Positions 1-64,000 of a stretch of 64,000 nucleotides of DNA are shown one piece after another. Within the stretch, counting starts at the first letter, position 1. Each line of letters begins with the position of its first letter. Under the pieces are notes generated by a model. That model had not been told where the DNA came from and searched no databases. It saw only the letters and a list, made by a program, of their open reading frames with translations. The DNA is from Podarcis erhardii (lineage: Eukaryota): assembly GCA_964252035.1 (NCBI GenBank), contig CAXUOO010000297.1. One strand, 5' to 3'. The position numbers and the translations under genes are program-made.

Positions 1-3000
1 AACGTAGATTCTATACAGGACGTGCTGGCGGTAAGCGCGTTTTTCCAGTGAGTAGATTCTGGGATTTGAAGAAACGCTGATGTCGGCGAAGAGCTGTTCT
101 GTGGTTCTATGTTTTGCAGTGTTTTTCTGCAATCGATTCAGTTCAATATGAGTAGTGTGAGGGCGTCGATGCGTTCTAGATCTTTTATTTTTTATGGTTG
201 CTGATGAATGCGACTGTGCGATGAACATGCGACATACTAAGAAGGTACAACTGCATTAGTGCTAGATTGGTATCGCGGAACATGAGGCGATGATTTGTAG
301 CATCGATATATCGTTTGAGATGATTGAGAACTGGGGGTTACGAAGAACATTTGCATATTTCTAATGTGTGTCAGGTATTCTCGAGCGGTCCAAGAAGTCC
401 TGCATCGACAATCAAATGAATACAATTTATTGTACATCGTCGCAAGTCAATTGGCATCGTCTGCGTGACGGATGAGGGTTGCGTGTTCTGTGTATGCTCT
501 GTTGGTGATGAGGAGACGCTGCTTTGTTTTGCGATTCCGGAATGCGTTAAAGATGTCTCCAAAGATATATACATGACGCTTCGGTGAGCGCGATTGTTTT
601 CAGCTAGTATAATCGGATGCTGCATTGGCTCATAAGCAGCTCCGAGATAGACTCGGAGGGTGCCTATTTTATTACACAGATATTTATATCCAGTTTGGAA
701 TGTGGCAGTATATAGTGCGTAACAAGGGAGAAGAAATTTGTACGAACAAGTAGAGCGTAGCGGATGCCTGGTCGTTTATATGTTGATGAGAACCTGTTTC
801 TGAAGGCCACTCAAGTGTTGAAATGATCAATATGCTTGACTTGTCGAAAATGTGTCGTTGTCGAGAGTCGCTGTTCTCAGCCGCTGGTACAATTCTGAAA
901 GGTGTCGCTTGATGCTGCAAAAAATCAGCTCTAGATTTTTGGATTGTTGGCTAAAACACACGGCTTGTGGGCAGTTTGTGCCGCCTGCTTAGTGCTTGGA
1001 AGTTCGGCATATAGACTATCTAAACGGGAAGAATATATCGCATGGCTAGCACATAGTGCAATAGTGTATAAACAAGACTGCAAACGTGTGTTATAGGATC
1101 TGGTGGTCAGTGTAGTATTGGCGAAAGCAAACCGATTTTGTTGAAACTGATGATGTGCAGAGATGCGAGCAGAATGGCGCGGTGAGGAAAAAGGCAACTG
1201 CAAGAGAGTCTTCGTCTATCACAGATGAGATGATATCATAGTGCTGACTGCTTTTATATAAGCAGGGATAAGAATTTGTGAGCTTTTTTATGTGATGGTA
1301 ATTTGTGTAGCAGTTTCTACACTGTGGGCGGTAGTTGCAGTATGGTGGGTATAGGAACTGCGCAAGGGCGTTTCTTTCCAACGCTATTCGTTCAACTAGT
1401 CAACCAAACGTGTCAGCAGAATTAAAGATTGGCATAGATCTTTCGGTCATAGAAAAAGCTAAACTGCTAGACGCCTTCATATGATACTGGTTCTTTCCTG
1501 GTTTCGCGTAGCTGGCATTTCTGTTTCGGTCTTAGACTGTGACAAACAATCATGATAGAAGTTTCATTTGTAAAAAGCAGAGCGTACGGTTTCCCTGTCT
1601 CAACAGCGTTTTGTATCAGGACATTGGTTTATTGATTCATAGCCAGTGAGGTTCTGTGATGTAGCCTTGACTAGAGAGTCTGACTTCGAGGAACCGCGGT
1701 TGTATTTGAATCTCTCAGAACATAGGAAGAGACATGCGGTTTTGTGCTTAAATTTGGGTTAGAGAGGTCGAGGTCAGATCACACTTGGATTGCTTTGACA
1801 GCCTGTAAGTGCGTTTGTTAAGAAATGCGCGCTAGAGTAGATATAGAAAGCTGAGATGTAACGTGTCATGGCAGGTTTAATAAATGATTCACACAATGAA
1901 TGGCGAATATGAAAAACGGGGACTGTTTTTCATATCTGGTCAAATCGAGTTGTTCGCAGTCAGGGCAAAATTACAATTCGTATGAATGCGAAGAAAGAAT
2001 ATGAATGGCTTGAGCGATTGACAATGAATGTTTACAAGGAAGAACCGTGTAGACTCTTGATAGCGTAAAATAGGTGTTCCGTTGTCTGAAGAAGGTGACG
2101 TCATTAAGGCTTGGAAACTAGCTCTGTGTGTGTGAACGTCGTTCGCTTACATGAGATGAGCGGCTGAAGAATTTTCTGTGTGTATACTTTCTGAAAAAAA
2201 CAACGTAGATGCTATACAGGACGTGCTGGCGGTAAGCGCGTTTTTCCAGTGAATAGATTCTGGGATTTGAAGAAAAGCTGATATCGGCAAAGAGCTGTGC
2301 TGTGGTTCTATGCTATTGCAGTGTTTCTCGACAATAGAACCAGTTCAATATGAGCAGTGAGTGATGGCGTCGATGCGTTTTGGATGTTTTATCTTTTACG
2401 ACTGCTGATGAATGCGACAGTGCGATGAACATGCGACATACTAGGAAGGTACAACTGCACTAGTGCTAGATTGGTATCGCGGAACATGACGCGATGATTT
2501 GTAGCATCGAGATATCGTTTGACATGTTTGAGAACACGAAGGTATGGGGAACATTTGCTTATTTCTAATGTGTGTCAGGTATTTTCGAGCGGTCCAAGGA
2601 GTCTTGCATCGACAATCAGATGAATACAAGTTATTGTACATCATCGCAAGTCAATTGGCATCGTCTTCGTGACGGATGAGGGTTGCGCGTTTTGTGTATG
2701 CTCTGCTGGTGACGAGGAGACGCTGCTTTGTTTTGCGATTCCGGAATGCGTTAAAGATGTCTCCAAAGATATATAGATGACGCTTCGGCGAGCGCGATTG
2801 TTTTTAGCTAGTATATTCGGATGCTGCATTGGCTCATAAGCGGCTCCGAAATAGACTCGGAGGGAGTCTATTTGATTACACAAATATTTTAATCTAGTTT
2901 GGAACGTGGCAGTATATAGTGCGTGATAGGAGAAATGAGATATATTTCAACAAGTAAGGCGTTTTAGATGCCTGGTCGTTTATATGTTGATGAGAACCTG

Positions 3001-6000: not shown

Positions 6001-9000
6001 TCCCTGTCTCGACAGCGTTTTGTAGCACGACATTTGTTCAATGATTCATAGCTAGTGAGCTCTTGTGATGTAGCCTTGAGTAGAGAGTCTGACTTTGAGG
6101 AACCGCGGTTGTATTTGAATCTCTCAGAACATAGGAAGAGACATGTGGTTTTGTGCTTTGATATGGGCTAGAGAGATCAATGTCAGATCACACTTGGATT
6201 GCTTTGACAGCCTGTAAGTGCGCTTGTCAAGAAATGAGCGACAGAGTAAATATAGAAAGCTGAGATGTAACGGGTCATGGCAGGTTTAATAAATGATTCA
6301 CACAATGAATGGCGAATATGGAAAACGGGGACTGTTTTTCATATCTGGTGAGATCGAGTCGTTTACAGACTGGTGCAAAATTACCATTCATATGAATGCG
6401 AAGAAAGAATATGAATGGCTTGAGCGATTGACAATGAATGTTTACAAGAGTAAACCGTGTAGACTCTTGATAGCGTAAAATGAATGTTTCGTTGTCTGAA
6501 GAAGGTGACGTCGCTAAGGCGTGGATACTAGCTCTGTGTGGACGTCTTTCGCCTACATGAGTTGAGCGGCTGAAGCGTTTTCTGTGTGTATAGTTTCTCA
6601 AACAAACAACGTAGATTCTATACAGGACGTGCTGGCGGTAAGCGCGTTTTTCCAGTGAGTAGATTCTGGGATTTGAAGAAACGCTGATGTCGGCGAAGAG
6701 CTGTGCTGTAGTTTTGTGGTATTGCAGTGTCTTTCGGCAATCGATTCAGTTCAATATGAGAAGCGAGTGATGGCGTCGATGCGTTCTGGACCTTTCATCT
6801 TTTATGATTGCTGATGAATGCGACTGTGCGATGAACATGCGACATACTAAGAAGGTACACCTGCATTAGTGCTAGATTGGTATCGCAGACATGAGGCGAT
6901 GAATTGTAGCATCGATATATCGTTTGAGATGATTGAGAACTGGAAGATACGGGGAACATTTGCATATTTCTAATGTGTGTCAGGTATTCTCGAGCGGTCC
7001 AAGAAGTCCTGCATCGACATTCAAATGAATACATTTTATTGTACATCGTCGCAAGTCAATTGGCATCGTCTGCGTGACGGATGAGGGTTGCGTGTTTTGT
7101 GTATGCTCTGTTGGTGATGAGGAGACGCTGCTTTGTTTTGCGATTCCGGAATGCGTTAAAGATGTCTCCAAAGATATATACATGACGCTTCGGTGAGCGC
7201 GATTGTTTTCAGCTAGTATAATCGGATGCTGCATTGGCTCATAAGCAGCTTCGAGATAGACTCGGAGGGTGCCTATTTTATTACACAGATATTTATATCC
7301 AGTTTGGAATGTGGCAGTATATAGTGCGTAACAAGGGAGAAGAAATGTGTACGAACAAGTAGAGCGTAGCGGATGCCTGGTCGTTTATATGTTGATGAGA
7401 ACCTGTTTCTGAAGGCCACTCAAGTGTTGAAATGATCAATATGCTTGACTTGTCGAAAATGTGTCGTTGTCGAGAGTCGCTGTTCTCAGCCGCTGGTACA
7501 ATTCTGAAAGGTGTCGCTTGATGCTGCAAAAAATCAGCTCTAGATTTTTGGATTGTTGGCTAAAACACACGGCTTGTGGGCAGTTTGTGCCGCCTGCTTA
7601 GTGCTTGGAAGTTCGGCATATAGACTATCTAAACGGGGAGAATATATCGCATGGCTAGCACATAGTGCAATAGTGTATAAACAAGACTGCAGACTTGTGT
7701 TATAGGATCTGGTGGTCAGTGTAGTATTGGCGAAAGCAAACCGATTTTGTTGAAACTGATGATGTGCAGAGATGCGAGCAGAATGGCGCGGTGAGGAAAA
7801 AGGCAACTGCAAGAGAGTCTTCGTCTATCACAGATGAGATGATATCATAGTGCTGACTGCTTTTATATAAGCAGGGATAAGAATTTGTGAGCTTTCTTAT
7901 GTGATGGTAATTTGTGTAGCAGTTTCTACACTGTGGGCGGTAGTTGCAGTATGATGGGTATAGGAACTGCGCAAGGGCGTTTCTTTCCAACGCTATTCGT
8001 TCAACTAGTCAACCAAACGTGTCAGCAGAATTAAAGATTGGCATAGATCTTTCGGTCATAGAAAAAGTTAAACTGCTAGACGCCTTCATATGATACTGGT
8101 TCTTTCCTTGTTTCGCGTAGCTGGCATTTCTGTTTCGGTCTTAGACTGTGACAAACAATTATGAGAGAAGATTCATTTGTAAAAAGCAGAGCGTACGTTT
8201 TCCCTGTCTCGACAGCGTTTTGTAACACGACATTTGTTCAATGATTCATAGCCAGTGAGCTCCTTTGGTGTAGACTTGAGTAGAGAGTCTGACTTCGAGG
8301 AACCGCGGCTGTGTGTAAATCTCTCAGAACGTATGAACAGACATGTGGTTTTGTGTTTACATTTGGGATAGAGAGATCGATGTAAGATCACAATTGGATT
8401 GCTTTGACAGCCTGTAAGTGCGTTTGTCAAGAAATGAGCGACAGAGTAAATATAGAAAGCTGAGATGTAACGGTTCATGGCAGGTTTAATAAATGATTCA
8501 CACAATGAATGGCGAATATGAAAAACGGGGACTGTTTTTCATATCTGGTCAAATCGAGTTGTTCGCAGTCAGGGCAAAATTACACTTCGTATGAATGCGA
8601 AGAAAGAATATGAATGGTTTGAGCGATTGACAATGAATGTTTACAAGGGAGAACCGTGTAGACTCTTGATAGCGTAAAATGAGTGTTTCGTTGTCTGAAG
8701 AAGGTGACGTCGCTAAGGCATGGATACTAGCTCTGTGTGGATGTCTTTCGCGTACATGAGTTGAGCGGCTGAAGCATTTTCTGTGTGTATACTTTCTCAA
8801 ACAAACATCGTAGATTCTATACAGGACGTGCTGGCGGTAAGCGAGTTTTTCCAGTGAATAGATTCTGGGATTTGAAAAAACGCTGATGTCGGCGAAGAGC
8901 TGTGCTGTGGTTCTATGTTTTGCAGTGTTTTTCTGCAGTCGATTCAGTTCAATATGAGTAGTGAGTGATGGCGGCGATGCGTTCTGGATCTTTTATCTTT

Positions 9001-11299
9001 TATGATTGCTGATGAATGCGACTGTGCGATGAACATGCGACATACTAAGAAGGTACAACTGCACTAGTGCTAGATTGGTATCGCGGAACATGAGGCGATG
9101 ATTTGTAGCATCGATATATCGTTTGTCATGTTTGAGAACACGGAGGTATGGGGAACATTTGCTTATTTCAAATGTGTGTCAGGTATTTTCGAGCGGTCCA
9201 AAGAGTCTTGCATCGACAATCAGATGAATACCATTTATTGTACATCATCGCATGTCAATTGGCATCGTCTTTGTGACGGATGAGGGCTGCGCGTTTTGTG
9301 TATGCTCTGTTGGTGATGAGGAGACGCTGCTTTGTTTTGCGATTCCGGAATGCGTTACAGAAGTCTTCAAAGGTATATAGATGACGCTTCGGCGAGCGCG
9401 ATTGTTTTTAGCTAGTATATTCGGATGCTGCATTGGCTCATAAGCGGCTCCGAAATAGACTCGGAGGGAGTCTATTTGATTACACAAATATTTTAGTCTA
9501 GTTTGGAAGGTGGCAGTATATACTGCGTAATAGGAGAAATGAGATATGTTTCAACAAGTAAGGCGTTTTAGATGCCTGGTCGTTTATATGTTGATGAGAG
9601 CCTGTTTCTGAAGGCCACTCAAGTGTTAACATGATCAATCCGCTTGACCTGTCGAAAATGTGTCGTTGTCGAGAGAAGCTGTTCTCAGCCGCTGGTTTGA
9701 TTCCGAAAGGTGTCGTTTGATGCTGCAGAATATCAGTTCTAGATTTTTGGTTCGTTGGGTAAAGCACACGGCTTGTGGGCAGTTTGTGCCGCCTGCTTAG
9801 TGCATGGAGGTTCGGCATATAGACTATCTAAACGGAGAGAATATATCACTTGGCTAGCACATAGTGCAATAGTGTATAAAAAAGTCTGCAAAAGTGTGGT
9901 ATAGGATCTGGTGGTCGGTGTAGTCTTGCCGACAGCAAACGGAATTTGTTAAAAATGATGATATGCAGAGATGCGAGCAGAATGGCGCGGTGAGAAAAAA
10001 GGCAACTGCAAGAGAGTTTTCGTCTATCACAGATGAGATGATAGCTTAGGGCTGACTGCTTTTATATAAGCAGGGATAAGAAGTTGTGAGCTTTTGTATG
10101 TGATGGTAATTTGTGTAGCAGTTTCTACACTGTGGGCGGTAGTTGCAGTATGGTGGGTACACTTCAGGAACTGCGCAAGGGCGTTTCTTTCCAACGCTAT
10201 TCGTTCAACTAGTCAGCCAAACGTGTCAGCAGAATTAAGAATTGGCATAGATGTTTCGGTCATAGAAAAAGTTAAACTGTTAGACGCCTTCATATGATAC
10301 TGGTTTTTCCCTGGTTTCGCGTAGCTGGCATTTCTGTTTCGGGCTTAGACTGTGACAAACATTCATGATAGAAGTTTCATTTGTAAAAAGCAGAGCGTAC
10401 GGTTTGCCTGTCTCGACAGCGTTTTGTATCAGGACATTGGTATAATGATTCATAGCCAGTGAGCTCCTGTGGTGTAGCCTTGAGTAGAGAGTCTCACTTC
10501 GGGGAACCGCGGTTGTATGTGAATCTCTCAGAACATATGAAGAGACATGTGGTTTTGTGCCTAAGTTTGGGTTAGCGAGATCGAGGTCAGATCACACTTA
10601 AATTGCTTTGACAGCCTGTAAGTGCGTTTGTCAAGAAATAAGCGACAGAGTAAATATAGAAAGCTGAGCTGTAACGGGTCATGGCAGGTTTAATAAACGA
10701 TTCACACAATGAATGGCGAATATGAAAAACGGGGACTGTTTTTCATATTTGGTGAAATCGAGGTGTTCGCAGTCAGGGCAAAACTACCATTCATATGACT
10801 GCGAAGAAAGAATATGAATGGTTTGAGCGATTGACAATGAATGTTTACAAGGAAGAACCGTGTAGACTCTTGATAAAGTAAAATGAGTGTTTCCTTGTCT
10901 GGAGAAGGTGACGTCGCTAAGGCTTGGATTCTAGCTCTGTGTGGACGTCTTTCGACTACATAAGTTGAGCGGCTGAAGCATTTTCTGTGTGTATACTTTC
11001 TCAAACAAACAACGTAGATTCTATACAGGACGTGGTGGCCGTATGCGCGAATTTTTCAGTGAATAGATTCTGGGATTTGAAGAAACGCTGATGTCGGCGA
11101 AGAGCTGTGCTGTGGTTCCATGCTATTGCAGTGGTTTTCGACAATAGAGCCAGTTCAATATGAGCAGTGAGTAAAGGCGTCGATGCGTTCTGGATGTTTT
11201 ATCTTTTATGACTGTTGATGAATGCGACTGTGCGATGAACATGCGACATACTAAGAAGGTTCAACTGCACTAGTGCTAGATTGGTATCGCGGAACATGG

Positions 11300-14200
11300 G
11301 GCGTTGATTTGGGCATCTATGTTTTGTTGTAACATTGTGCAGCAGGTATGCTCGAGCGATCGAAGATGTTTGGCATCGCCAATCATTTTTCTAAAATCTT
11401 TCATGCACTACCGCAGGTTCGGTGGAATCATCTGCATAAAGGATGAGGTTTGCGGATGCAGTAAGCCGGTGACAGCTTGCATTGGGTGCCTCGAAGAGTA
11501 TGAGACGATTCTGTGAGCGTGATTGTTTTTCAGCTACACTTTGTGTTGCTAAGGTGGCTTACGAGGGGCTAAACGATAGGCTTGAAGGTGTGTATTCAAT
11601 CACAAAAGTGTTTTTTTCAGTTTGAAATGTAAGAGAATATTTCGCTTGACTGGAGAAAAGATATGTAGCTTAACAAGCAGAGGTTTGTTAACGCCTGATC
11701 GTCTTCGTCTGAATATAAGTGGAAATAGATTTCTTAAGTCCACCACAATGCTGCTTCGCAACAGGTATATAGATTTTTTCATTAAGCGCACGTGCCGTTC
11801 GTAGTATCAAAGTGATTCGCAGCGTCTTTCTTAGACGCTCTTAATATGCAACTGTTGCTCCTTTGGCCGTTCGCCAGTGTGTCGTTTTCTAGAGGTTGTC
11901 CTCAGACTCTTTCATTTCAATGCATGAGAGAAAAGCTGTTCTCAACCGCATTGTAAAAATGCTGAAGGATGTCGCTGGGTGTTGTAGAAAATCAGTCCTA
12001 GCTCGTTGGTTTGGTCGGCTGAAGCACGTGGCTTGTGGACAGTGTATGATGCCTTGTTAGTGCACGGGAGGTTCGGCATGTAGACTATTTGTCGGCAGTG
12101 TAGAGTTCTTGGCTCACTTAGTGTGGTATCAAGAAAGACAACTCTGCACTACTGTGCTATGGGGTCTGTTGGACGGTGTAGTTTTGGTGAGAGCAAAAGA
12201 GTAAAGTAGAAAAGAACAAACGTTCGAAGATGAGAGCAGAGTGTTCTGCAGAGAAAAGAGGCCACTGTGGGAGATTCTTTGTCGGAGACAAACGAGATGA
12301 TATCATTGTACTATTACATAGACAGGCATAGGGAATGGAGACTTTTTTTCTGTTAAGTGGTTTGTATAGCAGTATATAAGCTGTGGGCCACAGCTGCGGC
12401 CTGGTGGATGTACTTCAGGGGCTACACAAGAGCGTTTCTGCCCACGCTTGTCTGCGAATAGTTGTAAAAGGATACTGTTTTTCAGCAGAGTTTGCGAGGC
12501 TGGCATAGACATTGCGGTTCTAGAGTGAGATAAACTACTAGACCTTTCATTAAATACTGTTTGTTCTTAGGAGTCACGTTGCAAGTTTAGGGGTTTCGGT
12601 CGCAGACTGTGATATGCAATTATGATAGAATTTCGAAGTGTCGAAGGCAGAGCTTACGTCTTCCATGCCACGTCAGAGCTTTGTGTCACATCATTTGTCG
12701 AATGATTTGTAGCTAGTAAGCTTTTCTTTTGAAGTTCAGAGTACAGAAACTATCTCTAAAAAGCCGTGGTTGTATGAAATTGTCAGGACATGCCACGTAG
12801 AGCGACACGTGGTTTTGCATTCAAATTTGCGCTAGATGGGTTGAGTCAGATCATCAGCTGTGCTTTCTCCGGTCTGTATTCGCGCTTTGTTCATACACTG
12901 TAAGTGCATCTTCCAATTACTGCGCGAGAGAATAAATGTAGGAAGCTGAGATGTAGCAGCTCATGCTAGATTGAATGAGGCCGAGTTCTTTTATCATAAT
13001 GGATGAGAGCGAGTTGTTCGCAGACTAGTGCGAAACTAGGATTTATATGAATGCGAAGAAAGAATTTTGAAGGGTTCAAGAGACTGATAATGAATGTTTA
13101 TCAAGAGTGAACGCGTAGACAATTGATAGCGTAAAATGAGTGTTTCGCTGTTCGAAGAATGTGAAGTAGTTGTTGCGTGAGACTCGCACTGGGTGTACTC
13201 CATTCATCTATATGAACTGAGCGGCTGAGGTATTCTTTGCGTGTTTGCTTCCTCAAACGAAAAGTGTAAATACGATAGAAGAGGTGCTTGCGATAGGCAC
13301 ATATTTCCACTGAAACTGATTGTCGGATTCGGAGAAATGCCAGTGCCGCTGAATAGCTGTTTTGTGATTCTAGGTTGTTGAAGATTTTTCAACAATGGAA
13401 TCAGTTTGATATGAGCAGAGAATGAGGCGTCGACGTGCCTTGTTTGTTATATCTTGTATGGATGCAGATGAATGCAAATGTGCGATGAACATGCTACATA
13501 TTACGAAGGAGCTAAATCAATATCGCGGCACACTAGGCGTCAATTGTTGTGTCGATGCCCACTGGAGCTGCCTGAGTAGTGGACGTTATTAGTAAAAGTT
13601 TGTATTTTATATTGTGGAAGAGGTTTGCTCGAGCGGTCCAAGAAGTCTTGCATCGACAGACAATTGATTCCGATGCATTGTAAACTATCGCATAGTTGGC
13701 ATAGTCTGCGTGACTGATGAGAGCTGCGGATGTGATTTTCTTTTTTATGGAGATGTGAAAACAAGCTGCTGTGTTCTAAGATCACGGAATGTGTTAAGAG
13801 TGCCTCCAAATATGCATGACGATTCGGCGCGGCGAGCGTGATCGTTTTCAGCTTGTATATTTGGATGCTGCTTTGGCTCATAAGCGGTTTCGAGATAGAC
13901 TTGAAGTTTGTCTATTTAATTACACAAATATGTTTTTCCATTTTGTAATGTGGGAGAATATTTTGCGTGACTAGAGAAAAGAGATGTATCTCAACAAGTA
14001 GAGCGTTGTGGATGTCTGATCAGTTGTATGTTGATGAGAAAAAGTTTCTGAAGGCCACTACGCAAGTGTTAAGTTGATCAATCCGCAGCCGTGCCGATCG
14101 TAATGTGAATGTGATTCAGAGCATTTTTTTGTAGATGCTCTTGTGAATCAAATGTCGCTTGCTTGGCCTGTCGCTAAAGTATCGTTGTCGAGAGGCTCCT

Positions 14201-15870
14201 TTCGACTTTTTGTTTTGATGAGATGCATGAGAGAAATGCTGTTCTCAGCCGCAGATTTCGAATACTGAAGAATGCAGCTTGGTTTTGCTTTTTGGTTTGT
14301 TCGGCTGAAGCAATTGGCTTATGGGAAGTGTCTGATGCCTGCTCAGTGCATCAAGGCTCGGCATGCAGTCTATTGGTTGGCAGTAGAAATTGCTTGGCTA
14401 GCACTTAGTGTGGTGTCAAGTAGTAAGATTCTGCAATACTGCGTTATGGAGTCTGTTGGACGGTGTAGTTTTAGTGAGAGCGGGAAGAATGCGGTAGAAA
14501 ACAACTAATATGCAAAGACGCGATCAGCGTGTTGTGGCGAGAAGAAAGGCAAATGAGGGAGAGTCTTCTTAAGAGGCAGACCAGGCGATATCATTGTGCT
14601 TTCAAATAGACAGGCGTAGGGAGTTCGAGCCTTCTATATGTAAAGATGTTTTGTCTAGCAGTATATATGCTGTGAACCATGAATCCGGTATGGTGAGTAT
14701 ATTTCAGGGGCTGCACGAAAACGTCTCTTCCCACGCTAATATGTGAACTATTGTAAAAGGACAATGCTTGTAAGCGAGGCTGTCAGAGACGTTACGTTTC
14801 AATTGTGGAAGGTTGGCAGAGCTGATGTTTTTCGTGTCACGACACCTTTGTATCACAACATTTAGCAAACGAACTGTAGCTACTAACCTCCTGTTTTGCA
14901 TTCTAGAGTAGAAAGCTGGTTTTGAGCTGCAGAACATTTCACACAGAGCGACAAGTGGTTTTGCTCTTTAAATTTCTATAGAAGTGCTGAAGTCAGATCA
15001 CTATTTGTATCTTCTGAAAGGTTGTAGGTGCACCTGTTGACTAATGCACTATTTGTATCTTCTGAAAGGTTGTAAGTGCACCTGTTGACTAATGCGGGAG
15101 AGAATAGATGTAGGACGCTGAGATGTGACCAAAAATGCTAGGATGAATAAATGATTTACATGGTATATGGCGCACAAGGGAGAATGCTGTCTTTCCTCAT
15201 TTTTGGTGAGGTCGAGTCGTTTGCAGACTAGTGTAAAATTACAATTCTCATGAGAGCAACAAAGGAGAATCCGGAAAGGTTGTGGACTGATAATGAATGT
15301 TTACAAGGAAGAAACGCGTAACTTAGCTGGTAGCGTAAAACGAATGTTTCGCTGTCTGAAGAAAGTGACGCAGTTGTGGCTTAGGAACTCATTCTGGCTA
15401 TACTTCTCTCATTTACACGAATTGAGCGGCTGAGGTTTTTTATGTATTTTCTTTTTCAACCGAACAAAGTAAATTCTACGCAGAACGTGGTGGCGGTAGG
15501 CGCTTATTTCCACTGAGAATGATTGTCGGATTCGAAGAAACGCCGGTGTTGCCGAAGATCTGTGCTCTGGTTCTAGGTTGATGGAGATTCTTCAACAGGG
15601 GAATTAGTTCAATATGAGCAAAGTGTAAAGAGGTGTCGAGGTGCCTTATTTCTTATGTCTTGTATAGTTGTTGTTAAGTGCGAATGTGTGATGAGCCTGC
15701 TACATATCACGAAGATACAATTACACTAGTGCGAGAGTTATATCGTGGTTCACGAAGAGTTGATTTGTAGTACCGATACATTTTTAGAGAGGATTGGGAA
15801 GACGGGGTTACCAGGGACATTAACATACTTTATAATGTGTATCAAGTATTCTCGAACGGTCCAAAGAGCC
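11300..15870. repeat. Divergent-monomer island, copy 1 (about two old-lineage monomers, D1 and D2, plus the start of a third, D3)
   Basis: It is collinear with the main monomer (shared blocks such as TAATGAATGTTTA, TAGCGTAAAA, TGAGCGGCTGA, GTCAGATCA, GCTGAGATGT) but has dense substitutions and private indels. The boundaries are approximate. Confidence 0.92.
14999..15094. repeat. 48-bp tandem duplication inside the D2 monomer
   Basis: CACTATTTGTATCTTCTGAAAGGTTGTA(G/A)GTGCACCTGTTGACTAATG occurs twice, with one mismatch. Confidence 0.97.
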
Positions 15871-18800
15871 TTGCATCGACAATCAAATGAATACAGTTTA
15901 TTGTACATCATCGCAAGCCAATTGGCATAATCTGCGTGACGGATGAGGGTTGCGCGTTTTGTGTATGCTCTGTTAATGATGAGGAGACGCTGCTTTGTTT
16001 TGCGATTCCGGAATGCGTTAAAGATGTCTCCAAAAAGATATACATGACTTTTCGGCGAGCGCGATTGTTGTTAGCTAGTATATTCGGATGCTGCGTAGGC
16101 TTATAAACGGCTCCGTGATAGACTCCGAGGGTGTCTATTTGATTACACAGATATTTATATCCAGTTTGGAACGTGGCAGTTTATAGTGCGTGATAGGAGA
16201 AATGAGATATGTACCAACAAGTAAGGCGTTGCAGATGCCTGGTCGTTTATATGTTGATGAGAACCTGTTTCTGAAGGCCACTCAAGTGTTAACATGATCA
16301 ATCCGCTTGACCTGTCGAAAATGTGTCGTTGTCGAGAGAAGCTGTTCTCAGCCGCTGGTACGATTCCGAAAGATGTCGTTTGATGGTGCAGAAAATCAGT
16401 TCTAGATTTTTGGTTTGTTGGGTAAAGCACACGGCTTGTGGGCAGTTTGTGCCGCCTGCTTAGTGCATGGAGGTTCGGCATACAGACTATCTGTAGGTGG
16501 AGAATATACTGCTTGACTAGCACTTAGTGCGGTACTGTATAAGCACGTCTGCGAAACTATGTTACAGGATCTGGTGGTCGGTGTAGTATTGGCGAGAGCA
16601 AACCGAATTTGTTAAAAATGATGATATGCAGAGATGCAAGCAAAAGGGCGCGGTGAGAAAAAAGACAACTGCAAGAGAGTCTTCGTCTATCACAAATGAG
16701 ATGATATCATTGTGGTGATTGATTTTATATAAGCAGGAATAAGAAGCTGAGAGCTTTTTTATGTGATAATAATTTGTGTAGCAGTTTCTGCACTGTGGGC
16801 GGTAGTTGCAGTATGGTGGGGATACTACAGAAACTGCGCAAGGGCGTTTCTTTCCAACGGTATTCGTTCAGCTAGTCAACCAAACGTGTCAGCAGAATTA
16901 AACATTGGCATAGATGTTTCGGTCATAGAGTAGGTTAAACTGCTAGACGCCTTCATATGATACTGGTTCTTTCCTGGTTTTGCGTAGCTGGCATTTCTGT
17001 TTCGGTCTTAGACTGTGACAAACAATCATGATAGACGAATCATTTGTAAAAAGCACAGCGTACGTTTTCCCTGTCTCGACAGCGTTTTGTAACACGACAT
17101 TTGTTCAATGATTCATAGCTAGTGAGCTCTTGTGATGTAGCCTTGAGTAGAGAGTCTGACTTCGAGGAACCGCGGTTGTATGTACATCTCTCAGAACATA
17201 TGAACAGACATATGGTTTTGTGTTTACATTTGGGTTAGGGAGATTGAAGTCAGATCACATCTGGATTGCTCTGACAGCTTGTAAGTGCGTTTGCTAGGAA
17301 ATGCGCGAGAGAGTAGATATAGAAAGCTGGGACGTAACGGGTTATGGCAGGTTTAATAAATAATTCACACAATGAATGGCGAATATAAGAAATTGGGGCT
17401 GGTTTTCTTATCTGTTGAGATCGAGTCGTTCACAGACTGGTGCAAAATTACAATTCGTATGAAAGCGAAGAAAGAAAATGAATGATTTGAGCGATTGAAA
17501 ATGAATGTTTATAAGGAAGAACCGTGTAGACTCTTGATAGCGTAAAATGAGTGTTCCGTTGTCTGAAGAAGGTGACGTCATTAAGGCTTGGAAACTAGCT
17601 CTGTGTGTGTGAACGTCGTTCGCTTACATGAGTGGAGCGGCTGAAGAATTTTCTGTGTGTATTCTTTCTCAAACAGACAACGTAGATTCTATACAGGACG
17701 TGCTGGCGGTAAGCGCGTTTTTTCAGTGAATAGATTCTGGGATTTGAAGAAAAGCTGATGTCGGCGAAGAGCTGTGCTGTGGTTCTATGCTATTGCAGTG
17801 TTTCTCGACAATAGAACCAGTTCAATATGAGCAGTGAGTGATGGCGTCGATGCGTTTTGGATGTTTTATCTTTTACGACTGCTGATGAATGCGACAGTGC
17901 GATGAACATGCGACATACTAGGAAGGTACAACTGCACTAGTGCTAGATTGGTATCGCGGAACATGACGCGATGATTTGTAGCATCGAGATATCGTTTGAG
18001 ATGATTGAGAACTGGGGGTTACGGAGAACATTTGCTTATTTCAAATGTGTGTCAAGTATTTTCGAGCGGTCCAAGGAGTCGTGCATCGACAATCAGATGA
18101 ATACAATTTAGTGTACATCATCGCAAGTCAATTGGCATCGTCTTTGTGACGGATGAGGGTTGCGCGTTTTGTGTATGCTCTGCTGGTGACGAGGAGACGC
18201 TGCTTTGTTTTGCGATTCCGGAATGCGTTAAAGATGTCTCCAAAGATATATAGATGACGCTTCGGCGAGCGCGATTGTTTTTAGCTAGTATATTCGGATG
18301 CTGCATTGGCTCATAATCGGCTCCGAAATAGACTCGGAGGGAGTCTATTTGATTACACAAATATTTTAATCTAGTTTGGAACGTGGCAGTATATAGTGCG
18401 TGATAGGAGAAATGAGATATGTTTCAACAAGTAAGGCGTTGCAGATGCCTGGTCGTTTATATGTTGATGAGAACCTGTTTCTGAAGGCAACTCAAGTGTT
18501 AACATGATCAATTCCCTTGACCTGTCGAAAGTGTGTCGTTGTTGAGAGTCGCTGTTCTCAGCTGCTGGTACACTTCTCTAAGGTGTCGCTTGATGCTGCA
18601 GAAAATCAGTTCTAGATTTGTGGTTTGTTGGCTAAAGCACACGGCTTGTGGGAAGTTTGTGCCGCCTGCTTAGTGCATGGAGGTTCGGCATATAGACTAT
18701 CTGTAGGTGGAGAATATACTGCTTGACTAGCACTTAGTGCGGTACTGTGTATGCACGTCTGCGAAACTATGTTACAGGATCTGGTGGTCGGTGTAGTATT

Positions 18801-20172
18801 GGCGAGAGCAAACCGAATTTGTTAAAAATGATGATATGCAGAGATGCGAGCAAAATGGCGCGGTGAGAAAAAAGGCAACTGCAAGAGAGTCTTCGTCTAT
18901 CACAGATGAGATGATATCATAGTGCTGACTGCTTTTATATAAGCAGGGATAAGACGTTGTGAGCTTCTCTATGTGATGGTAATTTGTGTAGTGGTTTCTA
19001 CACTGTGGGCTGTAGTTGCAGTATGGTGGGTATACTTCAGGAACTGCGCAAGGGCGTTTCTTTCCAGCGCTATTCGTTCAACTAGTCAACCAAACTTGTC
19101 AGCAGAATTAAAAATAGGCAGAGATGTTTCGGTCATAGAGTAGGTTAAACTGCTAGACGCCTTCATATGATACCGGTTCTTTCATGGTTTCGCGTAGCTG
19201 GCATTTTTTTTTCGGTCTTAGACTGTGACAAACAATCATGATAGAAGTTTCATTTGTAAAAAGCAGAGCGTACGGTTTCTTTGTCTCAACAGCGTTTTGT
19301 GTCAGGACATTGGTTTATTGATTCATAGCCAGTGAGCTCCTGTGGTGTAGCCTTGAGTAGAGAGTCTCACTTCGGGGAACCGCGGTTGTATGTGAATCTC
19401 TCAAAACATAGGAAGAGACTTGTGGTTTTGGGCTTAAATTTGGGTTAGAGAGATCGAAGTCAGATCACACTTGGATTGCTTTGACAGCCTGTAAGTGCGT
19501 TTGTCAAGAAATGAGCGACAGAGTAAATACAGAAAGCTGAGATGTAACGGGTCATGGCAGGTTTAATAAATAATTCACACAATGAATGGCGAATATGAAA
19601 AACGGGGACTCTTTTTCATATTTGGTGAAATCGAGTTGTTCGCAGTCAGGGCAGAATTACAATTCGTATGAATGCGAAGGAAGAATATGAATGGTCTGAG
19701 CGATTGACAACGAATGTTTACAAGGAAGAATCGTGTAGACTCTTGATAGTGTGAAATGAGTGTTTCGTTGTCTGAAGAAGGTGATGTCGCTAAGGCATGG
19801 ACACTAGCTCTGTGTGGACGTCTTTCACCTACATGAGATGAGCGGCTGAAGATTTTTCTGTGTGTATACTTTCTGAAACAAACAACGTAGATTCTATACA
19901 GGACGTGGTGGCCGTATGCGCGAATTTTTCAGTGAATAGATTCTGGGATTTGAAGAAACGCTGATGTCGGCGAAGAGCTGTGCTGTGGTTCCATGCTATT
20001 GCAGTGGTTTTCGACAATAGAGCCAGTTCAATATGAGCAGTGAGTAAAGGCGTCGATGCGTTCTGGATGTTTTATCTTTTATGACTGTTGATGAATGCGA
20101 CTGTGCGATGAACATGCGACATACTAAGAAGGTTCAACTGCACTAGTGCTAGATTGGTATCGCGGAACATGG

Positions 20173-23100
20173 GGCGTTGATTTGGGCATCTATGTTTTGT
20201 TGTAACATTGTGCAGCAGGTATGCTCGAGCGATCGAAGATGTTTGGCATCGCCAATCATTTTTCTAAAATCTTTCATGCACTACCGCAGGTTCGGTGGAA
20301 TCATCTGCATAAAGGATGAGGTTTGCGGATGCAGTAAGCCGGTGACAGCTTGCATTGGGTGCCTCGAAGAGTATGAGACGATTCTGTGAGCGTGATTGTT
20401 TTTCAGCTACACTTTGTGTTGCTAAGGTGGCTTACGAGGGGCTAAACGATAGGCTTGAAGGTGTGTATTCAATCACAAAAGTGTTTTTTTCAGTTTGAAA
20501 TGTAAGAGAATATTTCGCTTGACTGGAGAAAAGATATGTAGCTTAACAAGCAGAGGTTTGTTAACGCCTGATCGTCTTCGTCTGAATATAAGTGGAAATA
20601 GATTTCTTAAGTCCACCACAATGCTGCTTCGCAACAGGTATATAGATTTTTTCATTAAGCGCACGTGCCGTTCGTAGTATCAAAGTGATTCGCAGCGTCT
20701 TTCTTAGACGCTCTTAATATGCAACTGTTGCTCCTTTGGCCGTTCGCCAGTGTGTCGTTTTCTAGAGGTTGTCCTCAGACTCTTTCATTTCAATGCATGA
20801 GAGAAAAGCTGTTCTCAACCGCATTGTAAAAATGCTGAAGGATGTCGCTGGGTGTTGTAGAAAATCAGTCCTAGCTCGTTGGTTTGGTCGGCTGAAGCAC
20901 GTGGCTTGTGGACAGTGTATGATGCCTTGTTAGTGCACGGGAGGTTCGGCATGTAGACTATTTGTCGGCAGTGTAGAGTTCTTGGCTCACTTAGTGTGGT
21001 ATCAAGAAAGACAACTCTGCACTACTGTGCTATGGGGTCTGTTGGACGGTGTAGTTTTGGTGAGAGCAAAAGAGTAAAGTAGAAAAGAACAAACGTTCGA
21101 AGATGAGAGCAGAGTGTTCTGCAGAGAAAAGAGGCCACTGTGGGAGATTCTTTGTCGGAGACAAACGAGATGATATCATTGTACTATTACATAGACAGGC
21201 ATAGGGAATGGAGACTTTTTTTCTGTTAAGTGGTTTGTATAGCAGTATATAAGCTGTGGGCCACAGCTGCGGCCTGGTGGATGTACTTCAGGGGCTACAC
21301 AAGAGCGTTTCTGCCCACGCTTGTCTGCGAATAGTTGTAAAAGGATACTGTTTTTCAGCAGAGTTTGCGAGGCTGGCATAGACATTGCGGTTCTAGAGTG
21401 AGATAAACTACTAGACCTTTCATTAAATACTGTTTGTTCTTAGGAGTCACGTTGCAAGTTTAGGGGTTTCGGTCGCAGATTGTGATATGCAATTATGATA
21501 GAATTTCGAAGTGTCGAAGGCAGAGCTTACGTCTTCCATGCCACGTCAGAGCTTTGTGTCACATCATTTGTCGAATGATTTGTAGCTAGTAAGCTTTTCT
21601 TTTGAAGTTCAGAGTACAGAAACTATCTCTAAAAAGCCGTGGTTGTATGAAATTGTCAGGACATGCCACGTAGAGCGACACGTGGTTTTGCATTCAAATT
21701 TGCGCTAGATGGGTTGAGTCAGATCATCAGCTGTGCTTTCTCCGGTCTGTATTCGCGCTTTGTTCATACACTGTAAGTGCATCTTCCAATTACTGCGCGA
21801 GAGAATAAATGTAGGAAGCTGAGATGTAGCAGCTCATGCTAGATTGAATGAGGCCGAGTTCTTTTATCATAATGGATGAGAGCGAGTTGTTCGCAGACTA
21901 GTGCGAAACTAGGATTTATATGAATGCGAAGAAAGAATTTTGAAGGGTTCAAGAGACTGATAATGAATGTTTATCAAGAGTGAACGCGTAGACAATTGAT
22001 AGCGTAAAATGAGTGTTTCGCTGTTCGAAGAATGTGAAGTAGTTGTTGCGTGAGACTCGCACTGGGTGTACTCCATTCATCTATATGAACTGAGCGGCTG
22101 AGGTATTCTTTGCGTGTTTGCTTCCTCAAACGAAAAGTGTAAATACGATAGAAGAGGTGCTTGCGATAGGCACATATTTCCACTGAAACTGATTGTCGGA
22201 TTCGGAGAAATGCCAGTGTCGCTGAATAGCTGTTTTGTGATTCTAGGTTGTTGAAGATTTTTCAACAATGGAATCAGTTTGATATGAGCAGAGAATGAGG
22301 CGTCGACGTGCCTTGTTTGTTATATCTTGTATGGATGCAGATGAATGCAAATGTGCGATGAACATGCTACATATTACGAAGGAGCTAAATCAATATCGCG
22401 GCACACTAGGCGTCAATTGTTGTGTCGATGCCCACTGGAGCTGCCTGAGTAGTGGACGTTATTAGTAAAAGTTTGTATTTTATATTGTGGAAGAGGTTTG
22501 CTCGAGCGGTCCAAGAAGTCTTGCATCGACAGACAATTGATTCCGATGCATTGTAAACTATCGCATAGTTGGCATAGTCTGCGTGACTGATGAGAGCTGC
22601 GGATGTGATTTTCTTTTTTATGGAGATGTGAAAACAAGCTGCTGTGTTCTAAGATCACGGAATGTGTTAAGAGTGCCTCCAAATATGCATGACGATTCGG
22701 CGCGGCGAGCGTGATCGTTTTCAGCTTGTATATTTGGATGCTGCTTTGGCTCATAAGCGGTTTCGAGATAGACTTGAAGTTTGTCTATTTAATTACACAA
22801 ATATGTTTTTCCATTTTGTAATGTGGGAGAATATTTTGCGTGACTAGAGAAAAGAGATGTATCTCAACAAGTAGAGCGTTGTGGATGTCTGATCAGTTGT
22901 ATGTTGATGAGAAAAAGTTTCTGAAGGCCACTACGCAAGTGTTAAGTTGATCAATCCGCAGCCGTGCCGATCGTAATGTGAATGTGATTCAGAGCATTTT
23001 TTTGTAGATGCTCTTGTGAATCAAATGTCGCTTGCTTGGCCTGTCGCTAAAGTATCGTTGTCGAGAGGCTCCTTTCGACTTTTTGTTTTGATGAGATGCA

Positions 23101-36700: not shown

Positions 36701-37859
36701 AGTTGCAGTATGGTGGGTACACTTCAGGAACTGCGCAAGGGCGTTTCTTTCCAACGCTATTCGTCCAACTAGTCAGCCAAACGTGTCAGCAGAATTAAGA
36801 ATTGGCATAGATGTTTCGGTCATAGAAAAAGTTAAACTGTTAGACGCCTTCATATGATACTGGTTTTTCTCTTGTTTCGCGTAGCTGGCATTTCTGTTTC
36901 GGGCTTAGACTGTGACAAACAATCATGATAGAAGTTTCATTTGTAAAAAGCAGAGCGTACGGTTTGCCTGTCTCGACAGCGTTTTGTATCAGGACATTGG
37001 TATAATGATTCATAGCCAGTGAGCTCCTGTGGTGTAGCCTTGAGTAGAGAGTCTCACTTCGGGGAACCGCGGTTGTATGTGAATCTCTCAGAACATATGA
37101 AGAGACATGTGGTTTTGTGCCTAAGTTTGGGTTAGCGAGATCGAGGTCAGATCACACTTAAATTGCTTTGACAGCCTGTAAGTGCGTTTGTCAAGAAATA
37201 AGCGACAGAGTAAATATAGAAAGCTGAGCTGTAACGGGTCATGGCAGGTTTAATAGATGATTCACACAATGAATGGCGAATATGAAAAACGGGGACTGTT
37301 TTTCATATTTGGTGAAATCGAGTTGTTCGCAGTCAGGGCAAAACTACCATTCATATGACTGCGAAGAAAGAATATGAATGGTTTGAGCGATTGACAATGA
37401 ATGTTTACAAGGAAGAACCGTGTAGACTCTTGATAAAGTAAAATGAGTGTTTCCTTGTCTGGAGAAGGTGACGTCGCTAAGGCATGGATACTAGCTCTGT
37501 GTGGACGTCTTTCACCTACATGAGTTGAGCGGCTGAAGCATTTTCTGTGTGTATACTTTCTCAAACAAACAACGTAGATTCTATACAGGACGTGGTGGCC
37601 GTATGCGCGAATTTTTCAGTGAATACATTCTGGGATTTGAAGAAACGCTGATGTCGGCGAAGAGCTGTGCTGTGGTTCCATGCTATTGCAGTGATTTTCG
37701 ACAATAGAGCCAGTTCAATATGAGCAGTGAGTAAAGGCGTCGATGCGTTCTGGATGTTTTATCTTTTATGACTGTTGATGAATGCGACTGTGCAACGAAC
37801 ATGCTACATACTAAGAAGGTGCAACTGCACTAGTGCTAGATTGGTATCGCGGAACATGG

Positions 37860-42430: not shown

Positions 42431-42439
42431 TTGCATCGA

Positions 42440-61863: not shown

Positions 61864-64000
61864 AACGTAGATTTTATACAGGACGTGCTGGCGGTAAGCG
61901 CGTTTTTCCAGTGAGTAGATTCTGGGATTTGAAGAAACGCTGATGTCGGCGAAGAGCTGTTCTGTGGTTCTATGTTTTGCAGTGTTTTTCTGCAATCGAT
62001 TCAGTTCAATATGAGTAGTGTGAGGGCGTCGATGCGTTCTAGATCTTTTATTTTTTATGGTTGCTGATGATGCGACTGTGCGATGAACATGCGACATACT
62101 AAGAAGGTACAACTGCATTAGTGCTAGATTGGTATCGCGGAACATGAGGCGATGATTTGTAGCATCGATATATCGTTTGAGATGATTGAGAACTGGGGGT
62201 TACGAAGAACATTTGCATATTTCTAATGTGTGTCAGGTATTCTCGAGCGGTCCAAGAAGTCCTGCATCGACAATCAAATGAATACAATTTATTGTACATC
62301 GTCGCAAGTCAATTGGCATCGTCTGCGTGACGGATGAGGGTTGCGTGTTCTGTGTATGCTCTGTTGGTGATGAGGAGACGCTGCTTTGTTTTGCGATTCG
62401 GAATGCGTTAAAGATGTCTCCAAAGATATATACATGACGCTTCGGTGAGCGCGATTGTTTTCAGCTAGTATAATCGGATGCTGCATTGGCTCATAAGCAG
62501 CTCCGAGATAGACTCGGAGGGTGCCTATTTTATTACACAGATATTTATATCCAGTTTGGAATGTGGCAGTATATAGTGCGTAACAAGGGAGAAGAAATTT
62601 GTACGAACAAGTAGAGCGTAGCGGATGCCTGGTCGTTTATATGTTGATGAGAACCTGTTTCTGAAGGCCACTCAAGTGTTGAAATGATCAATATGCTTGA
62701 CTTGTCGAAAATGTGTCGTTGTCGAGAGTCGCTGTTCTCAGCCGCTGGTACAATTCTGAAAGGTGTCGCTTGATGCTGCAAAAAATCAGCTCTAGATTTT
62801 TGGATTGTTGGCTAAAACACACGGCTTGTGGGCAGTTTGTGCCGCCTGCTTAGTGCTTGGAAGTTCGGCATATAGACTATCTAAACGGGAAGAATATATC
62901 GCATGGCTAGCACATAGTGCAATAGTGTATAAACAAGACTGCAAACGTGTGTTATAGGATCTGGTGGTCAGTGTAGTATTGGCGAAAGCAAACCGATTTT
63001 GTTGAAACTGATGATGTGCAGAGATGCGAGCAGAATGGCGCGGTGAGGAAAAAGGCAACTGCAAGAGAGTCTTCGTCTATCACAGATGAGATGATATCAT
63101 AGTGCTGACTGCTTTTATATAAGCAGGGATAAGAATTTGTGAGCTTTTTTATGTGATGGTAATTTGTGTAGCAGTTTCTACACTGTGGGCGGTAGTTGCA
63201 GTATGGTGGGTATAGGAACTGCGCAAGGGCGTTTTCTTTCCAACGCTATTCGTTCAACTAGTCAACCAAAACGTGTCAGCAGAATTAAAGATTGGCATAG
63301 ATCTTTCGGTCATAGAAAAAGCTAAACTGCTAGACGCCTTCATATGATACTGGTTCTTTCCTGGTTTCGCGTAGCTGGCATTTCTGTTTCGGTCTTAGAC
63401 TGTGACAAACAATCATGATAGAGTTTCATTTGTAAAAAGCAGAGCGTACGGTTTCCCTGTCTCAACAGCGTTTTGTATCAGGACATTGGTTTATTGATTC
63501 ATAGCCAGTGAGGTTCTGTGATGTAGCCTTGACTAGAGAGTCTGACTTCGAGGAACCGCGGTTGTATTTGAATCTCTCAGAACATAGGAAGAGACATGCG
63601 GTTTTGTGCTTAAATTTGGGTTAGAGAGGTCGAGGTCAGATCACACTTGGATTGCTTTGACAGCCTGTAAGTGCGTTTGTTAAGAAATGCGCGCTAGAGT
63701 AGATATAGAAAGCTGAGATGTAACGTGTCATGGCAGGTTTAATAAATGATTCACACAATGAATGGCGAATATGAAAAACGGGGACTGTTTTTCATATCTG
63801 GTCAAATCGAGTTGTTCGCAGTCAGGGCAAAATTACAATTCGTATGAATGCGAAGAAAGAATATGAATGGCTTGAGCGATTGACAATGAATGTTTACAAG
63901 GAAGAACCGTGTAGACTCTTGATAGCGTAAAATAGGTGTTCCGTTGTCTGAAGAAGGTGACGTCATTAAGGCGCGGAAACTAGCTCTGTGTGTGTGAACG
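61864..64000. repeat. Partial monomer M29, a near-identical copy of M1
   Basis: It shares the M1 haplotype along nearly its whole length (GTGTGAGGGCGTCG, TTACGAAGAACATT, AAACGGGAAGAATA, GCGCGCTAGAGTAG, AAATAGGTGTTCC). The ORF track offset is ~61861-61862. Confidence 0.9.

What the first reader, a model, noticed from the sequence alone, without database searches (positions are those of the whole stretch)
1..64000. Gene-free, kilobase-monomer satellite array with layered higher-order structure: candidate centromeric or structural locus
Seen: 64 kb of one ~2.2 kb unit with no unique DNA, no credible ORF and no internal short periodicity I could detect, organised into nested duplications and old divergent islands. 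Established: kilobase-scale centromeric monomers are known in chicken and potato, and human macrosatellites such as D4Z4 and DXZ4 are ~3 kb. Higher-order repeats with relict divergent monomers are typical of alpha-satellite evolution. Inference: this may be an undescribed long-monomer satellite family, possibly centromeric, subtelomeric or germline-restricted. I do not recognise the monomer.
Basis: partly seen in the sequence, partly recalled or inferred. Interest (0 to 1): 0.7.

Follow-up and report, generated by a model that had tools for sequence, protein, structure and literature searches.

The report
Kilobase-unit non-coding tandem array, probably parasite
The whole 64-kb window really is 29 head-to-tail copies of a 2.2-kb non-coding unit, grown by copying blocks of several units, but its DNA shows no vertebrate-type CpG decay, so it most likely belongs to the coccidian parasite assembled with this wall lizard and is an ordinary satellite-like array.

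Summary
The window holds 29 same-strand monomers of about 2205 bp with no unique DNA between them. Twenty-three 'main' monomers are 86-100% alike. A pair of old monomers, 67-70% like the rest, occurs three times. Block duplications are nested: 8.87 kb at 99.94% identity, and about 9 kb and 4.5 kb at 98.6-98.9%.

The unit is non-coding by every test run. It has no Rfam, tRNA or Pfam match. Its open frames are no longer than composition predicts and are not conserved between monomers. None of 24 distinct indels is a multiple of three. It has no inner periodicity, including none at about 245 bp.

New here: CpG is at 1.05 of expectation, and CpG transitions are no commoner than other C/G transitions. 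The DNA therefore evolves unmethylated. That fits the coccidian that this scan has noted on other pieces of the assembly, where it also found kilobase satellites, and does not fit the lizard.

Short-read contigs from two samples in different studies reproduce the divergent monomers and their junctions, so this is not an assembly concatemer. A centromere role cannot be tested here.

The closest known analogues are the Toxoplasma B1 and TgIRE arrays; no homology to B1 was found. Verdict: a new member of a known kind, of low interest.

The parts
1..64000 (+). Uninterrupted tandem array of 29 monomers of about 2205 bp, the last one cut by the window end. All are in one orientation. The + strand is G- and T-rich (G 0.266, C 0.163; GC skew about +0.24 in every 2-kb bin).
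1..2203 (+). Reference monomer M01. It has no inner repeat, no Rfam or Pfam match, and a mean folding z-score of about 0.
11317..15465 (+). Divergent island, copy 1. It comprises most of hybrid monomer M06, whose first ~304 bp (11011-11317) are still 89-95% main-like, plus monomer M07. Both are 67-70% like the main monomers and about 67% like each other.
   Evidence: A 4633-nt short-read contig of run X1 matches 11269-14800 with 0 differences.
20190..24338 (+). Divergent island, copy 2 (M10 and M11). By the matrix it is 100% identical to copy 1; the block holding it is 99.94% identical.
37877..42025 (+). Divergent island, copy 3 (M18 and M19), 98-100% like copies 1 and 2.
11001..28623 (+). Youngest block duplication. 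11001-19750 is repeated 8873 bp downstream at 99.94% identity, with 5 differences (M06-M09 = M10-M13).
7001..16000 (+). First copy of an older block (part of M04 to part of M08). It is repeated at +26560 (33561-42560) at 98.6% identity. In addition, 20001-24500 matches 37688-42187 at 98.9%.
61864..64000 (+). Monomer M29, 99.6% identical to M01 at an offset of 61863 bp (28 monomers). This hints that a still larger block is repeated and that the array runs on beyond the window.
14999..15095 (+). 48-bp internal tandem duplication private to the M07-type monomer (also at 23872-23968 and 41559-41654).

Best explanation
This is a non-coding macrosatellite: a single 2.2-kb complex unit with no sub-repeats, amplified head to tail.

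Inferred mechanism: the array grows and is partly homogenised by in-register unequal exchange (or replication-based block duplication) between misaligned copies. Such events duplicate blocks of several monomers at a time and carry along two relict, very old monomers. Short conversion or crossover tracts produce hybrid monomers; M06 is one, main-like for its first ~304 bp and old thereafter.

The sequence itself appears to evolve neutrally and has no detectable product.

The array most likely lies in the nuclear genome of the coccidian parasite co-assembled with the wall lizard, not in the lizard, because it evolves as unmethylated DNA. It probably forms one locus of modest copy number, comparable in kind to the single-locus B1 array of Toxoplasma gondii.

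Shown: the anatomy, the lack of coding or RNA-family signal, the lack of CpG decay, and presence in independent samples. Inferred: the exchange mechanism, the parasite origin, the single locus and the absence of function.
For: Anatomy:
- 29 in-register monomers with nested duplications at 99.94%, 98.9% and 98.6% identity.
- M06 is a hybrid monomer with its breakpoint near unit position 304.

Neutral, non-coding evolution:
- Divergence is spread evenly along the unit. No block stays conserved between old and young monomers, apart from the recently converted first ~300 bp of M06.
- There is no Rfam hit at E<=1 over 16 kb that includes both divergent types, and no tRNA.
- Ten long ORFs and 42 six-frame pieces have no credible Pfam match; the best E-value, 0.0096 over 42 tests, is at chance level.
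- ORF lengths equal the Markov expectation.
- ORFs are intact in only 3-9 of 29 monomers, and 0 of 24 distinct indels are multiples of three.
- The mean folding z-score is 0.01.

Unmethylated genome:
- CpG observed/expected is 1.05.
- Per-site C>T is 0.217 at CpG against 0.228 elsewhere, and G>A is 0.198 against 0.217.
- Among about 175 recent differences between duplicated blocks, the CpG transition rate is 0.68% against 0.95% at other G/C sites (odds ratio 0.71, p 0.28).

Independent DNA:
- Run X1 has an exact 4.6-kb contig of the island.
- Run X2 (another species label, another study) has contigs across the M05/M06 and M06/M07 junctions with 1-2 differences.
- In X1 the summed depth of main monomers (mean about 157) is 6.4 times that of the island (24.5). 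The window's ratio is 23:3 = 7.7, so the reads fit the assembled proportions and one locus.
- The share of words held varies from 0.08 to 0.39 among runs of similar contig total (about 1.31-1.63 Gb), as parasite load would.

Context and precedent:
- Earlier notes of this scan report many coccidian genes and kilobase satellites on other pieces of this assembly. These are leads, not proof.
- Non-coding single-locus B1 and the 1919-bp TgIRE arrays exist in T. gondii (PMC8092015).
Against: - The window has no flank, so no parasite gene is physically linked to the array.
- GC content of 43% resembles the lizard as much as a coccidian. I recall about 50% for Toxoplasma and Eimeria and did not check this.
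- Depths from contigs are rough and cannot be set against host single-copy depth, so 'low molar abundance' is not shown.
- The lack of CpG decay excludes a methylated vertebrate locus but does not by itself name a coccidian.
- The strong, uniform strand asymmetry, together with an asymmetric transversion rate (per site, C transversions 0.206 against G transversions 0.122, p 0.0008), could reflect transcription or one-way replication. That would sit uneasily with 'no activity at all'.
- Two lizard RNA runs gave zero reads, but this is no test if the parasite is absent from them.
Confidence: 0.7

Rival explanations
1. The array is a satellite of the wall lizard's own nuclear genome (for example on a sex chromosome or microchromosome, or germline-restricted) that happens to escape CpG methylation.
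For: The array is found in contigs of runs labelled with two lizard species from four studies, with near-identical junction pieces in a second species label. GC of 43% is lizard-like.
Against: CpG observed/expected is 1.05, and there is no excess of CpG transitions among either old or very recent differences. Methylated vertebrate repeats, from established knowledge, show roughly ten-fold CpG hypermutability. The share held varies about five-fold among runs of similar contig total. Two lizard RNA runs gave no read.
Confidence: 0.13
2. The array is the functional centromere of one parasite chromosome, with a chromosome-specific long-monomer satellite that binds CENH3.
For: It is gene-free and longer than 64 kb, with young homogenised blocks next to old relict monomers. 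That layout is common at satellite centromeres.
Against: By the paper read, T. gondii centromeres were located by CenH3 ChIP-on-chip and Hi-C contact peaks. That they lack satellite arrays is my recollection of Brooks et al. 2011, which I did not check. The depth ratio fits one locus, not a family shared by chromosomes. Earlier notes report a different (~245-bp) satellite family on several other pieces of this assembly, which makes that family a better centromere candidate. No conserved box survives between old and young monomers.
Confidence: 0.1
3. The unit is a decayed tandem gene or transposon copy, or a transcribed non-coding RNA array whose transcription along the + strand causes the G+T excess.
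For: There is a uniform GC skew of +0.24 and AT skew of -0.06 on the + strand, and significantly asymmetric C:G transversions. The Toxoplasma B1 array was first described as a 'gene'.
Against: There is no Pfam domain in any frame and no Rfam family. No ORF is conserved, and frameshifting 1-bp indels dominate. Folding energies show no excess structure. No RNA reads were found, although that test is void if the parasite is absent.
Confidence: 0.06
4. The array is an assembly artefact: a concatemer of a small circular or over-expanded repeat.
For: The 8.87-kb duplication is 99.94% identical and could in principle be over-assembled.
Against: Monomers differ by 4-33%, so this is not one circle read many times. 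Short-read contigs reproduce the divergent island and its junctions in two samples, and the main-to-island depth ratio of 6.4 agrees with the assembled 7.7. There is no plasmid match and no replication protein.
Confidence: 0.02

Closest known systems
Toxoplasma gondii B1 repeat (the 'B1 gene', GenBank AF179871)
   Same: B1 is a non-coding tandem array at a single locus in a coccidian, with 9-19 tandem copies in long-read assemblies and a copy number that varies between strains (PMC8092015). The unit length of about 2.2 kb comes from my memory of Burg et al. 1989 and was not checked here.
   Different: No sequence likeness was found. The four B1 primer sites taken from PMC4842229 have 5-8 mismatches of 20 at best and are not collinear. 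This array has at least 29 units, with relict monomers and nested block duplications. Homology remains untested at full length because no B1 sequence was available to the tools.
TgIRE (1919-bp unit) and SAT350/Sat680 satellites of Toxoplasma and Neospora
   Same: These are kilobase or sub-kilobase non-coding tandem repeats of tissue-cyst coccidia.
   Different: They lie at several subtelomeric sites, whereas the read-depth ratio here fits one locus.
Vertebrate macrosatellites (D4Z4, DXZ4) and long-monomer centromeric repeats of chicken and potato
   Same: The unit is kilobase-scale, and the array is tandem and polymorphic.
   Different: D4Z4 holds a gene (DUX4), and these vertebrate arrays are CpG-methylated; both points are established knowledge. 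This unit has no ORF and no CpG decay.
Alpha-satellite higher-order repeats
   Same: Both show in-register multi-monomer duplication, with young homogeneous blocks beside old divergent monomers.
   Different: The monomer is 2.2 kb, not about 171 bp, and has no sub-monomer structure. No regular period repeats many times; each block occurs two or three times.
The ~245-bp-based kilobase satellites noted earlier in this assembly (s1-263164, s1-241318, s1-263147)
   Same: They are probably from the same source organism, and they too are gene-free, layered arrays tens of kilobases long.
   Different: Those units are multimers of a ~240-bp monomer. This 2205-bp unit (9 x 245 by arithmetic) shows no such ladder, and a look-up by sequence found no look-alike window (a blank there means little).

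Membership tests
Satellite / macrosatellite DNA | Many head-to-tail copies of one unit, uninterrupted | tested here: met
   29 in-register units fill 64 kb.
Satellite / macrosatellite DNA | Unit of about 1 kb or more with no protein or known RNA product | tested here: met
   The unit is about 2205 bp. There are no Rfam, tRNA or Pfam hits, ORFs are at chance level and not conserved, and 0 of 24 indels are in frame.
Satellite / macrosatellite DNA | Real in the organism's DNA, not an assembly product | tested here: met
   Short-read contigs from two samples reproduce the divergent monomers and junctions, and the depth ratio of 6.4 compares with the assembled 7.7. X1 may be the assembly's own sample.
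Regular higher-order repeat (alpha-satellite type) | A fixed multimer repeated many times, with high identity between multimers and low identity within them | tested here: not met
   Only nested blocks present two or three times were found (offsets 8873, 17687 and 26560). The order of monomer types is otherwise irregular.
Centromeric satellite | Bound by CENH3/CENP-A, at the primary constriction or Hi-C clustering point | not testable with these tools
   No ChIP, Hi-C or flanking sequence is available.
Subtelomeric repeat | Adjacent to telomere repeats at chromosome ends | not testable with these tools
   The window has no flank, and TRF found no short tandem arrays in it.
Methylated vertebrate (lizard) repeat | CpG depletion and excess CpG>TpG/CpA changes between copies | tested here: not met
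   CpG observed/expected is 1.05, and CpG transition rates are no higher than non-CpG rates among both old and recent differences.
Toxoplasma B1 repeat | Sequence homology to AF179871 | tested here: inconclusive
   Only four primer sites could be tested. None matched and the best sites were not collinear.
Tandem gene array or transposon-derived array | Recognisable protein domain or conserved reading frame | tested here: not met
rDNA, 5S, snRNA or spliced-leader arrays | Match to an RNA family | tested here: not met
   No Rfam match at E<=1 in 1-16000 on either strand, and no tRNA.

The most novel reading that the evidence does not exclude
The array is not inert. It would be either the chromosome-specific centromere of an unsequenced lizard coccidian, which would be a satellite-based centromere in a group where, as I recall and did not check, Toxoplasma's mapped centromeres lack satellite arrays. 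Or it would be a lizard satellite that wholly escapes CpG methylation, for example germline-restricted DNA. Its strand-asymmetric mutation pattern would then mark one-way transcription or replication through the array.
Probability: 0.1. Interest if true: 0.55.

Novelty: new member of a known kind. Interest (0 to 1): 0.25.

Why it matters
This matters mostly as housekeeping. The finding flags a 64-kb stretch, and probably a whole contig, of a wall-lizard assembly as likely cobiont DNA. It also shows that a simple CpG-decay test can sort gene-free repeats between a vertebrate host and an apicomplexan parasite.

For parasite biology, it adds a long-monomer array to the few kilobase-unit tandem repeats known in coccidia (B1, TgIRE). 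Multi-copy loci of this type are what sensitive PCR diagnostics of such parasites have used, as with B1 in Toxoplasma. It does not open a new mechanism.

Tried and rejected
1. Hidden ~245-bp sub-monomers, as in the other satellites of this assembly (2205 = 9 x 245). Ungapped autocorrelation, 7-mer-seeded self-BLAST and a ladder check found only one isolated spike at 488 bp and no multiples. Rejected.

2. Coding potential on the minus strand, where all long ORFs lie. It is explained by composition. The ORFs are not conserved, indels shift the frame, and there is no Pfam match. Rejected.

3. Homology to Toxoplasma B1. The four published primer sites do not match. Burg 1989 and Grigg 2001 were not held, so no full-length test was possible.

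4. A known RNA family or structured RNA. Rfam was blank. The folding z-scores average 0, with one window at -3.3 (611-730, minus strand) caused by two small palindromes that are not kept in all monomers.

5. A small plasmid or vector concatemer. There was no plasmid match.

6. The same repeat elsewhere. A degenerate 40-mer scan of metagenome contigs found nothing, and the scan's own index by sequence was blank.

7. Expression. Two RNA runs under the lizard species label gave zero reads, which is uninformative if the parasite is absent.

8. Literature on coccidian satellite centromeres. The search returned nothing specific.
Full report
**Observation.** The window has no N, and its composition is very even: GC 0.42-0.44 and GC skew +0.21 to +0.27 in every 2-kb bin. 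The commonest distances between repeated 16-mers are 2203-2208 bp, followed by 8873, 17687 and 26560 bp. BLAST of the first 2203 bp against the window tiles it with 29 same-strand units, with nothing between them.

A MAFFT alignment gives the identity matrix:
- 23 main monomers are 86-100% alike.
- M06/M10/M18 are about 70% like the main group.
- M07/M11/M19 are about 67% like the main group.
- These two old types are also only about 67% like each other.

The first ~304 bp of the M06 type are still 89-95% main-like, and identity then drops to about 60%. M06 is therefore a hybrid monomer with a crossover or conversion breakpoint.

**Nested duplications.** Ungapped diagonals show three block duplications (difference counts):
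- 11001-19750 is repeated at +8873 with 99.94% identity (5 differences).
- 7001-16000 is repeated at +26560 with 98.6% identity.
- 20001-24500 is repeated at +17687 with 98.9% identity.

M29 is 99.6% like M01 at an offset of 28 monomers. This suggests an even larger repeated block and an array that continues beyond the window. The order of monomer types is otherwise irregular. The structure is therefore nested block duplication, not a regular higher-order repeat.

**Not coding, and no known RNA.**
- An Rfam scan at E<=1 of 1-16000, which includes both divergent types, gave nothing, and ARAGORN found no tRNA.
- All ORFs of 90 aa or more are on the minus strand. This follows from composition, because the minus strand is poor in G and so poorer in stop codons. 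Second-order Markov sequences give as many long stop-free runs (mean 115 against 127 observed) and equally long ones (up to 286 against 272 codons).
- The longest frames of M01 are intact in only 3-9 of 29 monomers, and none of 24 distinct indels is a multiple of three; 19 are single bases.
- Ten long ORFs and all 42 six-frame pieces of 35 aa or more from one unit have no credible Pfam match.
- Folding energies in 120-nt windows average z = 0.01. The single outlier, 611-730 on the minus strand, comes from two short palindromes that several monomers have lost.
- Divergence between old and young monomers is spread evenly along the unit, with no conserved box.

**No sub-repeat.** Earlier notes of this scan describe 2.4-kb and 1.45-kb satellite units in this assembly that are multimers of a ~240-bp monomer. 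Since 2205 = 9 x 245, I tested for the same structure here. Autocorrelation shows no ladder at 244-246 bp or its multiples, and sensitive self-BLAST finds only two tiny matches. The unit is a complex sequence.

- CpG is at 1.05 of its expectation.
- Variants were polarised against the main-group majority. Per-site C>T is 0.217 at CpG and 0.228 elsewhere, and G>A is 0.198 and 0.217.
- Among the roughly 175 differences between recently duplicated blocks, which need no polarity, transitions hit 0.68% of CpG positions and 0.95% of other G/C positions (odds ratio 0.71, p 0.28).

Germline-methylated vertebrate repeats lose CpG about ten times faster than other sites (established knowledge). This array, which is old enough to hold monomers 33% diverged, shows none of that. 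It therefore evolves as unmethylated DNA.

The scan's earlier notes, which are AI notes I did not re-derive, report many spliced coccidian genes and several kilobase satellites on other pieces of this wall-lizard assembly. A coccidian cobiont is the natural source.

In public runs, 15 hold part of the monomer. They come from four studies and carry two species labels. The shares run smoothly from 0.39 down to 0.08 at similar contig totals of about 1.31-1.63 Gb. That spread fits varying parasite load better than a fixed host locus. I put the parasite origin at about three in four. No gene is physically linked to the array in this window, and GC content does not discriminate.

**Reads.** One read-laying run was made, on 5994 letters (8807-14800).
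- Run X1 is the best holder and possibly the assembly's own sample. It has a 4633-nt contig identical to 11269-14800, at depth 24.5.
- In X1 the summed depth over the main monomer averages about 157. The ratio of 6.4 is close to the assembled 23:3 = 7.7. The assembled proportions are therefore supported, and the family need not exist outside an array like this one.
- Run X2 has another species label and comes from another study. It has contigs across 11005-11191 (1 difference) and 13241-13465 (2 differences). These cover the M05/M06 and M06/M07 junctions, so the relict monomers and their placement are shared between samples.
- Two RNA runs under the lizard species label gave no read. The tool itself marks this as no test unless the organism is shown to be in the run.

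**Strand asymmetry.** The + strand has G 0.266 against C 0.163, and T 0.303 against A 0.268. Per site, C transversions (0.206) exceed G transversions (0.122; p 0.0008). Transitions and A/T changes are symmetric (from the counts). The skew thus seems to be maintained by a strand-asymmetric mutation process, as transcription or one-way replication would cause. I cannot tell which, and majority-rule polarity is approximate. This observation remains unexplained.

**Mechanism.** The anatomy is what in-register unequal exchange or block duplication within a tandem array produces. Multi-monomer blocks are copied, relict monomers hitch-hike (three copies of the M06-M07 pair), and short conversion tracts give hybrid monomers. 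These steps are inferred from the pattern and were not observed. I found no evidence of a sequence-level function, and neutral or selfish persistence is the default reading. A centromere or chromosome-end role is not excluded but cannot be tested without flanks, Hi-C or CENH3 data.

**Comparison with known systems.** In Toxoplasma gondii, long-read assemblies show B1 as a non-coding single-locus tandem array of 9-19 copies. They also show TgIRE (1919-bp unit) and SAT350 as subtelomeric repeats at several sites (PMC8092015). B1's ~2.2-kb unit length is from my memory of Burg et al. 1989; that paper and Grigg 2001 were not held. Four B1 primer sites from PMC4842229 have no counterpart in the monomer: the best matches have 5-8 mismatches of 20 and are not collinear. 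B1 is therefore an analogue, and homology is unsupported, though it could not be tested at full length. A metagenome scan with a degenerate 40-mer and a plasmid search were blank.

**Verdict.** The interpretation as a long-monomer satellite is right in kind. However, the array is most probably parasite DNA, is not a regular higher-order repeat, and has precedents in coccidia. It is a new member of a known kind and of low interest. This scan has already reported similar gene-free layered arrays of the same cobiont on other DNA.

A majority rule was used inside scripts only to polarise substitutions in this non-viral repeat.

Noticed in passing
window:1-64000: Strong, uniform strand asymmetry: GC skew about +0.24 and T>A on the + strand. 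It appears to be maintained by asymmetric C:G transversions (per site 0.206 for C against 0.122 for G, p 0.0008), while transitions are symmetric. This could mark one-way transcription or replication through the array.
   Followed up: partly
window:1-2138 and 61864-64000: The first and last monomers are 99.6% identical at an offset of 28 monomers (61863 bp). This hints at a ~62-kb super-unit and an array longer than the window.
   Followed up: no
window:11011-11317 (also 19884-20190 and 37571-37877): The first ~304 bp of the old M06-type monomer are 89-95% main-like, and the rest is about 60-70%. There is a sharp conversion or crossover breakpoint inside a relict monomer.
   Followed up: partly
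window:640-658: A perfect 7-bp-stem palindrome with a 5-nt loop lies next to a second short palindrome (about 621-640). It gives the only low folding z-score (-3.3). The old M07 type keeps it with one two-sided change, but M06, M08 and M23 break it, so it is probably chance.
   Followed up: partly
Read-laying run X1: The longest contig in run X1 is 36,104 nt, while the mean contig is about 190 nt. That size recalls a coccidian apicoplast genome (about 35 kb, from memory) at high copy number. I could not inspect the contig.
   Followed up: no
window:14999-15095, 23872-23968, 41559-41654: A 48-bp tandem duplication (2 copies, 97% matches) is private to the M07-type relict monomer and is present in all three of its copies.
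   Followed up: no
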